Source: Auanema rhodensis
Taxonomy: Eukaryota; Animalia; Nematoda
DNA: 64,000 bases
Assembly (NCBI GenBank): GCA_964057225.1
Contig: OZ059899.1
Span: forward strand, 7,440,001-7,504,000
Direction of reading: 5' to 3'
Shown here: one piece after another, positions 1 through 3,925 of the stretch
How the letters are laid out: every line of letters starts with the position of its first letter
How positions within the stretch are numbered: the stretch's first letter is position 1
Made by a program: the position numbers and the translations under genes
Notes under the pieces: generated by a model
The model's database searches: none
The model's input: the letters and a program-made list of their open reading frames with translations, nothing else
What the model was told of the DNA's origin: nothing

Positions 1-3000
1 GATTCAGGTACAACTAGAAGATCATCTACTTTTTCTCTCATATGTGATACAACATTAGTCCATGTTTCTTCAACTTCTGGTGGGAAATATCCTTCACTAT
101 ATGTTTTATATAAAATTGAATTAAAATATTTTTGAAATCAGCTTACATTTTCATATCATTTAATAAACTTTTTAGTGTAAATGACATCATCCTTACGGTT
201 TGTCTTGTCTTAATCACAGGTATTACGCTAAAACCATCGTTGTTTTCTTTGAAATATAATCTTACAAAACTATTTATTATCTGTAAAATGTATAATATTA
301 TATTAAATTTTAAAAAAAATTAAACTATACACTAGTTAGTTTTTCAATTTCTCTTGTAACAGTTCTATAAGCTTCTTCACTATATAAATCTGGAGATATA
401 TGAGTTTCTTTTAACATAATATTAAAGAAATGTAAAACAGCCATACGAACACGATCATATGTTAACTAAATTATTATTTTATTTTTATTATAATCATTTT
501 AAAAAAACCTTTCTTTTTACTTGAGACTCTCTTAAAGTTATAATTGTAAGAGGTATGGCTCGTATTAATCGGAATGCACTACATGTTACTAATGAACCAA
601 TGAAAATATTGAAAACAATAGAACAAAAAACTAAAATATTACAAGAAAAAAAGATTTAAATAATTAAATATTTTCAAACTCACGATCTTGCTGTATATCA
701 TTATTTACACATTTTCCACCATCTATCATAAGAAAAACAGATATAAAAGCAATTGACATCAATATTGGAACAATTGAAGCAGGAACAATACCCTTTATAA
801 TAAACTAAAATATTTAAAATTTTAATTTTATATACCAAATAATAGCTTCCATATCTTTTATTCTTATATGATTGATGTACTATATATATCATTTCAACTA
901 ATGATGTAATCCATAATATCCAAAAATTAGCCAAATATATTGCTGCGGATGGAATTGGCTGAAATTTTAAAAACAATATGAAATTAATATAAACCTTAAT
1001 GATACTGTTATATAATAAGTCCATAGTATCATTACAGTAAATCCACATATGATAAATGTATGAAGAATCCACCATCTAACAATATATAAAATAAAATAAT
1101 TAAGATTCTATAGAAACATTTCTATTTTTCTATTTTTAATCCTTTCAATCGGTTTCATTTCACTGAATAATCGATGTTTTCCTATTGTACAAAATCTAAG
1201 AAATTCAGTACAAGAATATCGTTCAAGGCAACGCTGTGATATCATATAATAAAATATAAATTATGCTAATTGATAATCATACTTACATACAGTACTTCAA
1301 CAACTCCACTAATCCATTTTGTAAACAATGATGGTTCCATTATTGATAATTGATCTTAATTATAATAATAATATTAATTTTATAATGAATAATACCATAT
1401 ACCTTCAATATGGGATGGAATAATATCACCCTCATCGATTCCATGTTCAAGAACTGCTGTCAGTATATGCATAGTTTTACCGGACACAGCACCTTGTTGC
1501 CAATAGTCATATGCCTAAATCAAAATTTTTAAAGATTTAAATTGATAATTAAAATTACTCGAGCCAATAGCTTTCCATATAAAGCTGTTTTTGCATTCAT
1601 AGCATCAACTTGTTTCATCTGTATGGCATCAGCTACTACCGAATCCAACCATGAATTCGAATCTGAATCACGTTCATGCATCAACTATAAGATTCATAGA
1701 TTATATAAATAATATAATAAATCTTACATTCTTTTTTTCAATACGCTTAAAACAGTTGAGAATTTCTTTTTCAGCTACAACCCAATTGGTTCCAATGTGA
1801 TGAGCACAATTTTTTCTTTTCATATTGTGAAGTTTTTTAAAAAACTTCAAGAAAAATATAATATTATACATAATAATATAAATTACTTCTTTTTCTATAT
1901 GATTATTTATTCTTGAACATGTTTCCATTACATATCTTGAACGTTTTGTTGTTCCTTCTCTTGCTACTATAAGACGATAGGTAACTCCCTGAAAAATAAT
2001 TAAATTATTTTATTTATTAACGAAACTATAATAACTTGAAAAACCAAACATGTAACAGTTGTAGAACATGTCAATAAAAGTATTACTTTAGTATCATCCA
2101 AATCACCAACATCAACCTCAAAAACAATATATATATTATCTTAATTTCTTAATTTTTTATATTTATATTAATAATAACCTGAAAAAATATATATATATCA
2201 TAAAAATATAAATTACTTCTTTTGTTAACTCCATTGCTAGTAACAAGCCTAGAGCTCCTCGAAGGCCAGAGTAAGCTAAGAGAACAAAATCAGTTTTTGA
2301 TGGTCTATCATCTTTAAAACATGGGTATATCTAAATATTTATATTATTTATATTATAATATCCTGCTAATAATTAACTTTATAATATAAATATGTTGATA
2401 TAATACGTCCTAATAAAGGTATAGGTGATATAATAACTCCTTGAATAAGTGTATAAATATCATTACTGGCTATTTTCGCATATGATTTTGGCTGGGGATT
2501 ACCCTGAACATTGTTTTTTAAAAATAAAAAAATCTAAATTGTCATACGGATACGGTAAATATTTCCTTTCCAATTAAATAGCCGGCATATGAGAATATAA
2601 CATTATTCGCCCAATAGCCTAATGATTGCCACACCTCTATTGCTACTTGTGATGTTTCTGGAGACATAACTTCTCTATAATTCAAAATTTCATTATATGA
2701 TATACATAAATATTTAATACTTATTATAGTTTAATGTAACTCCAAAAAACATTATTCCCAAAGCTGGAGAACCATTGAGCTTATCACATGTTATAAACAT
2801 AATAAATACACATGACAATATTAATGCCTTCAAATGTATTTATATGATATACAATGAAATTATATATTTTAATAAAACTAACCTGTTTCTTTTTAGTTTC
2901 TACGATTTTACCGAGTATTCTGGTTAGAAGAGAAGCAGAAACAATTCCAAGTATTGGCGATAGCACGAAACAAGTAAGCATTGAAAATAATTGAGGCATA

Positions 3001-3925
3001 AGTTGTATGCTATGATTGACTGTCTCGAACTGTATTTAAACATGAACTTATAATTAATATATTATAATTATACTTTAAACATTTCTAATATTATTCTATA
3101 TAATGTTAAAGCTAAACCATCGTTCAATAAACTTTCACCCTCAATCATTAGCCGAAGTCTGTAGCATTTTTCATCAAATGATAACAATTAATTAACTTAT
3201 TACCTATGTGGAGCTCCATATTGCTCTAACATTGCAAGAACTGCTACAGGATCGGTTGCAACAATAATGCATACAAAGAGAAATACCTGAAAGTTATTTA
3301 TTCAAAAATAATAATGTTTACTTTTATTTTACAGCTGATATACACAGATTTTGAGTTGACATCAGTAGTGGTATCATAAGAGCTGATGATATCATTAATG
3401 TTCCAATATATATGAATACTGTTAATGATATCAACATTTTTAGTTTTGCATAAAATAGATGAGAATTGATTCGAAGAGCTGAATCAAAAATTAATGGAGG
3501 TAACATTAACTAAAAAAAATAATATTATATGTTATAGCTAATTAAATAATGAAATTACCAATAATACTGTTTGAGGATCTAATGTAATCCATGTGTATAT
3601 TTTATCTATTTTATTTGTGATATCAACTGCCAGAAATTTGTTTAACATAAAGCTTGAAATTAAATATAGTTAATAAAAAACAAATATAAAATAACCTGCA
3701 ACACATAGCAAAAACAAATTGAACAATACTATCAGGTAATCCAAGAAATTTTAAACGTTTATTAACCTATATAATTATATAAATATAATAATTTTAATAA
3801 AAATAAATTAATGTCATTCTTACCTCATCTAATATTAAGCCAATTATGAAAGCAGCACATGGAAATATAAACGTTTGTAGAAGCGTTTGATGATCATCAT
3901 GATTATCAATTGAATGATCCGTCAT
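1..3925 (-). CDS. SLC9C (sNHE/SOS1-type) Na+/H+ exchanger with VSD-like 4-TM module; multi-exon, 3' end beyond the left edge
   Basis: Spliced minus-strand exons give CPA1 motifs (MLPPLIFDSA, IVATDPVAVLAMLEQYGAPH, MIEGESLLNDG, AYSGLRGALGLLLA). These are followed by the SLC9C-type cytosolic helix (AYDYWQQGAVSGKTMHIL), four further TM helices ending in FRLIRAIP, then LTYDRVRM and VIKTRQTVRMM (cf. SLC9C1 SVKTRQAIRTIL). ATG at 3925. Confidence 0.85.

What the first reader, a model, noticed from the sequence alone, without database searches (positions are those of the whole stretch)
1..3925. SLC9C (sperm-type, voltage/cAMP-gated) exchanger homologue in a nematode, with a degenerate voltage sensor
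Seen: after the CPA1 domain come four TM helices: WWILHTFIICGFTVMILWTYYIT, AIYLANFWILWITSLVEMIYIV, FIIKGIVPASIVPILMSIAFISVFLMI and IVFNIFIGSLVTCSAFRLIRAIP. LTYD and KTRQ motifs follow in the SLC9C order. S2 keeps N...E, but S3 lacks the usual Asp and S4 has only two Arg. Known: SLC9C1 controls flagellar pH together with sAC and CatSper; C. elegans nhx genes are not of this type, and nematode sperm are amoeboid. Inference: a retained SLC9C with lost or retuned voltage gating, possibly co-opted for pH control of MSP-based motility or sperm activation.
Basis: partly seen in the sequence, partly recalled or inferred. Interest (0 to 1): 0.75.

Follow-up and report, generated by a model that had tools for sequence, protein, structure and literature searches.

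The report
Sensor-degenerate SLC9C exchanger gene in nematodes
The window holds most of an intact, single-copy nematode gene for a sperm-type (SLC9C-class) sodium/proton exchanger whose transport core is conserved but whose voltage sensor and cyclic-nucleotide site are degenerate, and relatives occur in many nematodes although reviews say the phylum lacks this class.

Summary
On the minus strand, window 3925 to 1 and about 1.45 kb further left encode a 32-exon, all GT-AG, stop-free model of 1225 aa.

- **Layout:** a CPA1 Na+/H+ exchanger core, a helical region, four TM helices, a helical linker with KTRQ, a CNBD-like fold and a beta-rich tail.
- **Family:** it is single copy. It belongs to a family found in more than 25 nematode species, including Haemonchus, Necator, Brugia, Ascaris, Toxocara, Steinernema, Pristionchus and C. 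auriculariae. No C. elegans protein was listed.
- **Link to SLC9C:** a profile of seven family members matches solved sea-urchin SLC9C1 best (191.7 bits), ahead of SOS1 (166), NHE3 (98) and NHE1 (81). The KTRQ linker matches only metazoan SLC9C. Predicted structures of two homologues match SpSLC9C1 best, also without the transporter half.
- **Degenerate sensors:** S4 keeps 2 of about 6 gating charges. This protein also lacks the S3 acid and the S2 aromatic. The phosphate-binding Arg of the CNBD is replaced and the cassette has a ~10-aa insertion. Pfam sees only PF00999.
- **Not tested:** a role in sperm.

The scan had already noted this same stretch in an overlapping window. The joined model went to no search or folding tool.

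The parts
1..3925 (-). Exons 1-25 of a 32-exon gene. The ATG is at 3925-3923. Exon 25 crosses the left window edge. Exons 26-32 lie at G000:C7:7438553-7439886 (L003:8553-9886), outside the window.
   Evidence: Manual splice model checked by script: all introns are GT-AG, there are no stops, and the product is 1225 aa. Nematode homologues align collinearly by tblastn along the whole locus. Only this locus in the genome matches the Haemonchus orthologue.
1887..3925 (-). CPA1 (NhaA-fold) Na+/H+ exchanger core, exons 1-13, about residues 1-472.
   Evidence: Pfam PF00999 hits on single exons and at the locus. phmmer gives 906 bits to Haemonchus P0021. hhalign to metazoan SLC9C gives probability 100.
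3204..3286 (-). Exon 5, holding the TM5 Asp (D160) of the ATDP motif.
   Evidence: The column is D in 56 of 57 aligned sequences. It corresponds to Asp209 of SpSLC9C1 as described in PMC10620092.
3074..3158 (-). Exon 6, holding E184 and the ND motif (N188, D189) of the ion-binding site.
   Evidence: The columns are E, N and D in 56 of 57 sequences. The ND motif marks electroneutral NHEs (PMC10620092).
1118..1844 (-). Cytosolic helical region between the core and S1, exons 14-18.
   Evidence: hhalign of model 440-644 against metazoan SLC9C gives E 0.003, at the collinear position 386-509. Against bacterial NhaP-CNBD proteins it gives E 9e-5. W and D columns are invariant.
1006..1075 (-). Exon 19: S1-like TM helix.
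   Evidence: The E-x-W-W lead-in is conserved in the nematode family.
836..958 (-). Exon 20: S2-like TM helix with the conserved Glu (E697, codon 895-893). The aromatic residue 3 positions before it is Ser here.
   Evidence: The S2 Glu column is E in 53 of 57 nematode and metazoan sequences. In the collinear alignment, hhalign confidence over S2 is 6-9.
684..804 (-). Exon 21: S3-like TM helix without an acidic residue, followed by a loop with two Cys.
   Evidence: Most other nematode members have a Glu in S3. The Cys pair in the S3-S4 loop is conserved in the family.
521..630 (-). Exon 22: S4-like helix with only two basic residues (R777 at 571-569, R780 at 562-560), followed by Pro.
   Evidence: The metazoan SLC9C sequences with a Pfam ion-transport match mostly have 6-7 basic residues at every third position (two mollusc paralogues have about 3). 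Nematodes have K/R-x-x-R, and Haemonchus has none. One S4 Arg column is R in 52 of 57 sequences.
1..465 (-). Exons 23-25: post-S4 cytosolic helices, equivalent to ICH5-ICH7 of SpSLC9C1. KTRQ is at 211-200.
   Evidence: hhalign of model 793-915 against metazoan SLC9C gives probability 90.7 and E 1.3e-6. Against bacterial NhaP-CNBD proteins it gives E 0.075. A nematode profile aligns here to SpSLC9C1 867-1035. Among the 129 proteins then fetched, KTRQ occurs only in nematode and metazoan SLC9C proteins.
805..835 (-). A 31-nt intron between exons 20 and 21, much shorter than most of the others (42-57 nt; three are 100-174 nt).
   Evidence: The alternative donor at 880 would delete a loop that is conserved in homologues.

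Best explanation
This is a functional, single-copy gene for a divergent SLC9C-class Na+/H+ exchanger. It belongs to a nematode-wide clade that descends from the metazoan sperm-type exchanger.

**Shown:**
- The gene is an intact 32-exon reading frame.
- Every residue that defines the electroneutral ion-binding site is conserved: the TM5 Asp, the Glu and ND of TM6, and both core Arg.
- The domain order is that of SLC9C: core, helical region, four TM helices, a long S4 continuation, helices carrying KTRQ-x-x-R, a CNBD fold and a beta-rich tail.

**Inferred:**
- The protein still exchanges Na+ for H+. Its cytosolic module probably still autoinhibits the core, because the basic residue aligned with Lys939 of the autoinhibitory helix ICH7 is kept as Arg.
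- It is probably no longer a true voltage sensor. S4 keeps 2 of about 6 charges, the S3 counter-charge is absent and the S2 aromatic is absent.
- It is probably no longer a canonical cAMP receptor. The phosphate-binding Arg is replaced and the cassette carries an insertion of about 10 residues.
- Release of inhibition would then depend on another signal, such as pH, phosphorylation or a partner protein, much as in SOS1.

The tissue of action is unknown. Sperm or the germline is a guess based on ancestry alone.
For: **Gene model:**
- All introns are GT-AG and there are no stops.
- Homologues align collinearly along the locus by tblastn.
- Only this locus matches the Haemonchus orthologue, so the gene is single copy.

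**Family:**
- A search with exon 4 found only nematode proteins at the top.
- A profile search listed 33 family entries from more than 25 nematode species.
- The window protein scores 906 bits against Haemonchus and sits inside a fully supported nematode clade (100 SH-aLRT).

**Link to SLC9C:**
- PDB hits, in order, are SLC9C1, SOS1, NHE3 and NHE1.
- A second stretch of the profile aligns to SLC9C1 867-1035.
- hhalign gives a collinear alignment of 988 columns.
- The linker matches only metazoan SLC9C, at E 1.3e-6.
- KTRQ occurs only in nematode and metazoan SLC9C proteins.
- Nematodes, a tardigrade and metazoan SLC9C group at 94 SH-aLRT, apart from protist and bacterial NhaP-CNBD proteins.

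**Structure:**
- AlphaFold2 of Steinernema P0009 shows four long helices, with S4 running on for 60 residues. Foldseek's best match is SpSLC9C1 at E 1e-26, and HCN1 also appears at E 3.5e-5.
- The regulatory half alone (A. ceylanicum P0163) matches SpSLC9C1 best. Foldseek gives E 1.4e-3 and probability 0.99. VIA-align gives Z 12.3 over 285 residues, aligned to chain 611-955. VSD-containing channels follow.

**Degeneracy:**

**Reference anatomy of SpSLC9C1:** PMC10620092.
Against: - The 4-TM block on its own has no significant profile match to metazoan VSDs (probability 0.1). No nematode member hits Pfam PF00520, and PF00027 hits are below threshold.
- Structural scores for the regulatory half are modest. 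Z values of 9-12 also occur for unrelated helical bundles, such as cytochrome oxidase subunits at Z about 9.
- The nematode stem branch is very long (3.36), and the tree tool warns of long-branch joins.
- The tree held no SLC9A or SOS1 sequences.
- All folding was done on homologues that are 28-40% identical, not on the window protein itself.
- Loss of sensing is read from sequence alone. Two S4 charges could still give weak voltage dependence.
Confidence: 0.75

Rival explanations
1. The protein is still regulated by voltage and/or cyclic nucleotide, with a retuned rather than a dead sensor. The two S4 arginines and the S2 Glu would form a minimal sensor, and the enlarged phosphate-binding cassette would bind cAMP, cGMP or another ligand.
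For: One S4 Arg column (R in 52 of 57 sequences) and the S2 Glu column (E in 53 of 57) are conserved between nematodes and metazoans. The G-x-F/V-I-G-E start of the binding cassette is kept. The genome has many cyclase and cNMP-binding genes. Mollusc SLC9C paralogues also have only about 3 S4 charges.
Against: In this protein the S3 acid and the S2 aromatic of the charge-transfer centre are missing. Haemonchus has lost both S4 charges and the S2 Glu yet keeps the gene. The Arg that binds the cyclic phosphate is not conserved, and about 10 residues are inserted. Pfam PF00027 is below threshold in all members tested.
Confidence: 0.13
2. It does not descend from SLC9C. It would be an SOS1-like or NhaP-CNBD-type exchanger that acquired four extra TM helices on its own, so the likeness to SLC9C is convergent.
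For: The CPA core, helical region and CNBD also match bacterial NhaP-CNBD proteins, at E 9e-5 and 2.4e-7. SOS1 scores close to SLC9C1 (166 against 191.7 bits, and VIA Z 42 against 41). The 4-TM block alone has no sequence match to VSDs. Single-sequence phmmer of the window protein does not separate metazoan from bacterial hits.
Against: The post-S4 linker with KTRQ-x-x-R matches only metazoan SLC9C. The four helices sit exactly where the VSD sits, between two collinear homologous segments. The S2 Glu and one S4 Arg align with conserved metazoan columns. The regulatory half alone matches SpSLC9C1 611-955 best. The tree groups the family with metazoan SLC9C.
Confidence: 0.09
3. The locus is a decaying or unexpressed relic (pseudogene).
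For: Sensor motifs are degenerate, one intron is an odd 31 nt, and the terminal branch is long (0.97).
Against: Thirty-two exons keep frame with canonical splice sites and no stop. All ion-site residues are conserved. The protein is 42% identical to Necator's over 781 columns. The gene is kept across clades III, IV and V.
Confidence: 0.03

Closest known systems
SLC9C1 (sNHE / NHE10), e.g. sea-urchin SpSLC9C1 (PDB 8OTX, 8PCZ, 8XQ8)
   Same: - The domain order is the same: CPA1 core with ND motif, helical region, S1-S4, a long S4 extension, helices with KTRQ-x-x-R, a CNBD and a C-terminal beta domain.
- It is the best sequence and structure match.
- The S2 Glu, one S4 Arg and the basic residue aligned with the ICH7 Lys are conserved.
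   Different: - S4 has 2 basic residues, against 6 gating charges in SpSLC9C1.
- This protein has no S3 acid and no S2 aromatic.
- The phosphate-binding Arg is replaced and the cassette has an insertion of about 10 residues.
- Neither PF00520 nor PF00027 is detected.
- The host lineage has amoeboid sperm and, according to PMC12867704, no sAC.
Plant SOS1 / NHX7 (PDB 7Y3E, 8IWO)
   Same: It is a long CPA1 exchanger with a helical domain, a CNBD-like domain that is not known to need a cyclic nucleotide, and an autoinhibitory C-terminus. It is the second-best match. Several nematode entries are even named 'Sodium/hydrogen exchanger 7'.
   Different: From my own knowledge of the SOS1 structures, not checked here, SOS1 has no transmembrane segments between the core and the CNBD-like domain. 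No SOS1 sequence was available for the KTRQ motif count.
Bacterial and protist NhaP-CNBD exchangers (PF00999 + PF00027, about 820 aa)
   Same: The CPA core, the following helical region and the CNBD are homologous.
   Different: They have no 4-TM block and no KTRQ linker. They form separate groups in the tree.
SLC9A-type NHEs (C. elegans nhx genes, NHE1-9)
   Same: They share the NhaA-fold core and the ND motif.
   Different: Their scores are much lower (NHE3 98, NHE1 81, NHE6 and NHE9 about 70-75 bits). They have short cytosolic tails and no S1-S4 or CNBD. The genome has about six other PF00999 loci that score better against Pfam and are the likely nhx genes.

Membership tests
SLC9C (sperm-type Na+/H+ exchanger) | CPA1 NhaA-fold core with an electroneutral ion site: the TM5 Asp, the TM6 Glu and ND, and two core Arg. 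| tested here: met
   In the window protein D160, E184, N188-D189, R364 and R397 fall in columns that are D, E, N, D and R in 56-57 of 57 sequences, and R or K in the last column. PF00999 is found at the locus.
SLC9C (sperm-type Na+/H+ exchanger) | Closer to SLC9C than to SLC9A, SLC9B, SOS1 or NhaP. | tested here: met
   The family profile scores SLC9C1 191.7, SOS1 166, NHE3 98 and NHE1 81 bits, and NHA2 is not hit. The tree gives 94 SH-aLRT with metazoan SLC9C. This was tested at family level. No SLC9A or SOS1 rows were in the tree.
SLC9C (sperm-type Na+/H+ exchanger) | Four TM helices (S1-S4) between the cytosolic helical region and the CNBD. | tested here: met
   Four hydrophobic exons lie at 1075-521, flanked by collinear homologous segments. 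AlphaFold2 models of two homologues show four long helices there.
SLC9C (sperm-type Na+/H+ exchanger) | S1-S4 is a voltage-sensor domain: an S4 with basic residues at every third position, a charge-transfer centre (S2 aromatic and Glu, S3 Asp), and recognition as an ion-transport or VSD fold. | tested here: inconclusive
   - **For:** the S2 Glu and one S4 Arg columns are conserved. The regulatory-half model matches SpSLC9C1 611-955 best (Z 12.3), followed by VSD-type bundles of TRPML, Nav1.7 VSD4 and HCN1.
- **Against:** there are only 2 S4 charges, no S3 acid and no S2 aromatic. There is no PF00520 hit. The block alone gives no profile match.
SLC9C (sperm-type Na+/H+ exchanger) | A long cytosolic S4 continuation and ICH5-ICH7 helices carrying the K-T-R-Q-A-I-R motif. 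| tested here: met
   KTRQ lies at 211-200. hhalign gives E 1.3e-6 to metazoan SLC9C only. The motif is restricted to nematode and metazoan SLC9C proteins. In the model the S4 helix spans 747-807.
SLC9C (sperm-type Na+/H+ exchanger) | A C-terminal cyclic-nucleotide-binding domain. | tested here: inconclusive
   - **Fold homology is supported:** hhalign gives E 2.4e-6, a nematode profile hits the CAP/CRP CNBD at E 0.007, and the model shows a beta-roll.
- **Canonical binding is not supported:** Pfam PF00027 scores only 14-19 bits against a cut-off of 27.5. The phosphate-binding Arg is not conserved and about 10 residues are inserted.

The domain lies left of the window (L003:9886-9289).
SLC9C (sperm-type Na+/H+ exchanger) | Male germline or sperm expression and functional coupling to sAC and CatSper. 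| not testable with these tools
   No expression data are available here. A Pfam scan for CatSper-delta found nothing, but its control shows that the result is uninformative. sAC is reported absent from nematodes (PMC12867704).
SOS1 / NhaP-CNBD type exchangers | The CNBD-like domain follows the cytosolic helical region with no membrane segments in between. | tested here: not met
   Four TM helices and an SLC9C-specific linker lie between them.
SLC9A / nhx | Highest similarity to NHE1-9 and a short regulatory tail. | tested here: not met
   NHE1, NHE3, NHE6 and NHE9 score 70-98 bits, against 191.7 for SLC9C1. About 750 residues follow the core.

The most novel reading that the evidence does not exclude
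Nematodes kept the sperm-type exchanger after losing flagella, sAC and CatSper, and turned it into a voltage- and cAMP-insensitive, autoinhibited Na+/H+ exchanger. In this reading it drives the intracellular alkalinisation that accompanies spermatid activation and MSP-based crawling. The C. elegans group would have lost it later and replaced it with other pathways.
Probability: 0.22. Interest if true: 0.75.

Novelty: new variant of a known kind. Interest (0 to 1): 0.58.

Why it matters
Reviews and comparative surveys treat SLC9C, sAC and CatSper as a co-inherited sperm-flagellum module. They list nematodes as lacking SLC9C (PMC11120249) and sAC (PMC12867704).

This gene and its relatives in more than 25 nematode species show that an SLC9C descendant persists without that module, with a conserved transport core and degraded sensors. 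That makes it a natural experiment on three questions:
- What the VSD and CNBD scaffold does when it no longer senses.
- Why Pfam-architecture surveys miss it, since only PF00999 is detected.
- Whether pH control in amoeboid sperm uses it.

Relatives occur in major parasites (Haemonchus, hookworms, filariae, Ascaris) and in the genetically tractable Steinernema hermaphroditum and Pristionchus pacificus, so the questions can be tested.

Tried and rejected
- **Exon-by-exon Pfam scans** of the CNBD, S4 and C-terminal exons gave nothing useful (one search failed on my wrong coordinates).
- **PDB phmmer with single exons** was not significant. The S2-containing open frame gave only chance cyclin hits. 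Exon 4 gave SLC9C1 only at E 3-6.
- **The whole-genome PF00027 scan** did not list this locus.
- **A word-index search with the C-terminal half of P0009** found only Steinernema proteins.
- **An ESM Atlas search with the 4-TM part** gave no usable hit.
- **hhalign of the 4-TM block alone and of the C-terminal beta domain alone** found no match.
- **VIA-align on the full-length model** was dominated by the transporter core and could not separate SLC9C1 from SOS1.
- **The CatSper-delta Pfam scan** was empty and its control shows it is uninformative.
- **A literature search for Bm10817** returned only unrelated papers. No held paper links SLC9C with Ascaris, Brugia, Haemonchus, Pristionchus or Steinernema.
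I rebuilt the model from coordinates only.
- **Rejected splice choices:** a 12-nt micro-exon between exons 30 and 31, the donor at 880 that would remove the S2-S3 loop, and a 37-nt intron after exon 27. Homologue alignments favour the model given.
- **sAC was not searched in this genome**, because no specific family model or referenced query was available.
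Full report
**Where the gene is**

The window is G000:C7:7440001-7504000 of a 181-Mb, very AT-rich genome (about 24-28% G+C at this locus). The finding lies on the minus strand. I read the DNA and fetched the 20 kb left of the window. From this I built a splice model by coordinates.

The model has 32 exons, running from the ATG at window 3925 to a stop at L003:8553 (G000:C7:7438553). Every intron is GT-AG and there is no internal stop. The product is 1225 aa. Most introns are 42-57 nt. 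One is only 31 nt (window 835-805), but homologues support keeping the loop that it preserves.

Tools received exons by reference. The joined sequence was used only inside local scripts, to check the frame and to align it with proteins the tools had returned.

**The observation**

So are KTRQ (211-200) and LTYD (start of exon 465-331). S4 has two Arg (R777, R780), and S3 has no acidic residue inside the helix. S2 has N686 and E697.

Upstream exons carry the hallmarks of a CPA1 exchanger. Single exons and the locus give weak Pfam PF00999 hits.

**Relatives**

Exon-wise searches of Pfam and of PDB sequences were too weak to decide anything. A full HMMER scan with the longest exon (59 aa) returned 14 proteins. 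The eight I looked up were five named nematode proteins, one UniRef entry from Steinernema glaseri and two unnamed MetaClust sequences. The named ones came from:
- Heligmosomoides
- Angiostrongylus
- Dictyocaulus
- Toxocara
- Caenorhabditis auriculariae

A profile of seven of these then recovered 33 family entries from more than 25 nematode species. They include Haemonchus, Ancylostoma, Necator, Pristionchus, Ascaris, Parascaris, Anisakis, Brugia, Wuchereria, Onchocerca and Dirofilaria. No C. elegans protein was among them. Only the best 120 of 3094 hits were listed, but an orthologue would be expected to score with the nematode group.

These proteins align collinearly with the whole locus by tblastn. 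The window protein scores 906 bits against Haemonchus. In a maximum-likelihood tree it sits in a fully supported nematode clade (100 SH-aLRT), nearest to the strongylids and C. auriculariae. The Haemonchus protein matches only this locus in the genome, so the gene is single copy. About six other PF00999 loci are the likely ordinary nhx genes.

**Is the family SLC9C?**

Several independent results point the same way.

| Test | Result |
|---|---|
| PDB, single nematode proteins | Best hit sea-urchin SLC9C1 (E 1e-33 and 3e-28) |
| PDB, family profile | SLC9C1 191.7 bits, SOS1 166, NHE3 98, NHE1 81, NHE6/9 about 70-75 |
| Profile, second stretch | Aligns to SLC9C1 867-1035, starting at K-T-R-Q-A-I-R and running into the CNBD |
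| Profile against CAP/CRP | Hits the cAMP-binding domain at E about 0.007 |
| hhalign, nematodes against metazoan SLC9C | One collinear alignment of 988 columns (model 82-1187) |

I then tested each domain separately against metazoan SLC9C and against bacterial NhaP-CNBD proteins.

| Region (model residues) | Metazoan SLC9C | Bacterial NhaP-CNBD |
|---|---|---|
| Helical region (440-644) | E 0.003 | E 9e-5 |
| 4-TM block (645-792) | no match | no match |
| Post-S4 linker with KTRQ (793-915) | E 1.3e-6 | E 0.075 |
| CNBD (916-1070) | E 2.4e-6 | E 2.4e-7 |
| C-terminal beta domain (1071-1190) | no match | no match |

So the linker is specific to SLC9C, while the CNBD and helical region are shared more widely. 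Among the 129 proteins then fetched, KTRQ occurs only in nematode and metazoan SLC9C proteins.

In the tree, nematodes, a tardigrade protein and metazoan SLC9C group at 94 SH-aLRT, apart from protist and bacterial relatives. The nematode stem is very long (3.36), and the tool warns about long branches.

**Structure**

AlphaFold2 of the Steinernema orthologue reached a mean pLDDT of 75.7. It shows the core and then four long helices at 610-634, 640-682, 690-722 and 747-807. The last helix runs on for 60 residues. That fits the unusually long S4 of SpSLC9C1 described in PMC10620092. A beta-roll CNBD and a beta-rich tail follow.

Foldseek's best matches are SpSLC9C1 entries (E 1e-26, about 1220 columns). 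SOS1 follows at E 1e-20, and HCN1, which has no exchanger domain, appears at E 3.5e-5.

A mis-split public gene model from Ancylostoma ceylanicum (P0163, 571 aa) covers only the regulatory half, model 615-1146. This allowed a test without the transporter core. Its model has a mean pLDDT of 68.
- Foldseek again matches SpSLC9C1 best (E 1.4e-3, probability 0.99). SthK, CNG, HCN and plant Shaker-type channels follow, as does the Nav1.7 VSD4 chimera.
- VIA-align gives Z 12.3 over 285 residues, with model 1-368 aligned to SpSLC9C1 611-955. S1-S4 bundles of TRPML and Nav1.7 follow at Z 9-10.
- Unrelated four-helix bundles also appear at Z about 9.

These scores are modest, but the ranking and the collinearity fit a VSD-derived bundle.

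**What is conserved and what is lost**

Conserved, from alignment columns across 57 nematode and metazoan sequences:
- The TM5 Asp, the TM6 Glu and the ND motif, which is the signature of electroneutral exchange according to PMC10620092.
- Both core arginines.
- The S2 Glu, which is E in 53 of 57 sequences.
- One S4 Arg, which is R in 52 of 57.
- K-T-R-Q-x-x-R.
- A basic residue in the column that, by my offset calculation, corresponds to the autoinhibitory Lys939 of ICH7. It is K in metazoans and R in nematodes.

Lost or degraded:
- The metazoan SLC9C sequences with a Pfam ion-transport match mostly have 6-7 regularly spaced basic residues in S4; two mollusc paralogues have about 3. Nematodes have only K/R-x-x-R followed by Pro, and Haemonchus has none.
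- Most nematode members keep an acidic residue in S3 and an aromatic 2-3 residues before the S2 Glu. The window protein has neither.
- In the CNBD the G-x-F-I-G-E start of the phosphate-binding cassette is kept. About 10 residues are inserted, and the position of the phosphate-binding Arg is not conserved.
- Pfam detects only PF00999 in eight members. PF00027 scores 14-19 bits against a cut-off of 27.5, and there is no PF00520 hit.

The last point probably explains why surveys based on domain architecture missed the family.

**Mechanism**

The following is inferred, not shown. The protein is most likely an active electroneutral Na+/H+ exchanger. Its SLC9C regulatory scaffold is kept as an autoinhibitory and dimerising module. 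That scaffold comprises the S1-S4 bundle, the rigid S4 extension clamped by ICH helices, an ICH7-like helix and the CNBD fold. It probably no longer responds to hyperpolarisation or to cAMP in the canonical way.

**Context**

Reviews state that SLC9C is not conserved in nematodes (PMC11120249) and that sAC is absent from the phylum (PMC12867704). No held paper links SLC9C to the nematode genera found here.

The genome has MSP-domain genes. C. elegans spermatid activation by triethanolamine or monensin is accompanied by a rise in intracellular pH (PMC10136096). A role in sperm pH is therefore conceivable but untested. The apparent absence of the gene from C. elegans argues that it is not generally required for MSP motility.

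**Verdict**

The gene is a new variant of a known kind, not a new kind.

Noticed in passing
window 805-835 (minus strand): The intron between the S2 and S3 exons is only 31 nt, while most other introns of the gene are 42-57 nt (three are 100-174 nt). Homologues support the loop it preserves, but such a short intron deserves a check against RNA-seq.
   Followed up: partly
L003:200-3500 (G000:C7:7430200-7433500), minus strand: A multi-exon SMC-type ATPase gene lies left of the exchanger gene. It has a Walker A exon and long coiled-coil exons and looks like SMC4.
   Followed up: no
public proteins P0037 + P0163 (Ancylostoma ceylanicum Y032_0007g3514 and g3513); P0031, P0033, P0028: Public gene models of this family are often split or truncated. 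The A. ceylanicum gene is annotated as two genes. The Necator and A. duodenale models stop before the CNBD. This, together with a Pfam architecture of PF00999 only, may explain why the family was never called SLC9C.
   Followed up: partly
P0021 (Haemonchus contortus), aligned to window 630-521 and 958-836: The Haemonchus orthologue has lost both S4 basic residues, and the S2 Glu is Gln, yet the gene is intact with several isoforms. This argues that the 4-TM bundle is kept for a role other than voltage sensing.
   Followed up: partly
window 720-640 (S3-S4 loop) and homologues: Two cysteines in the extracellular S3-S4 loop are conserved across the nematode family. Metazoan SLC9C lacks that loop, which suggests a lineage-specific disulfide-stabilised loop.
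   Followed up: no
P0082 (Paramacrobiotus metropolitanus, tardigrade): A 1174-aa tardigrade protein with only PF00999 in Pfam falls in an unresolved group with nematode and other metazoan SLC9C proteins. Its S4 keeps R-x-x-R-x-x-R-x-x-K. This would be an intermediate state of decay within Ecdysozoa.
   Followed up: partly
G000:C5:9718001-9718059 (L002): A 59-nt stretch 83% identical to window 271-327, which spans an intron and the start of an exon. It is AT-rich and probably a chance or low-complexity match.
   Followed up: no
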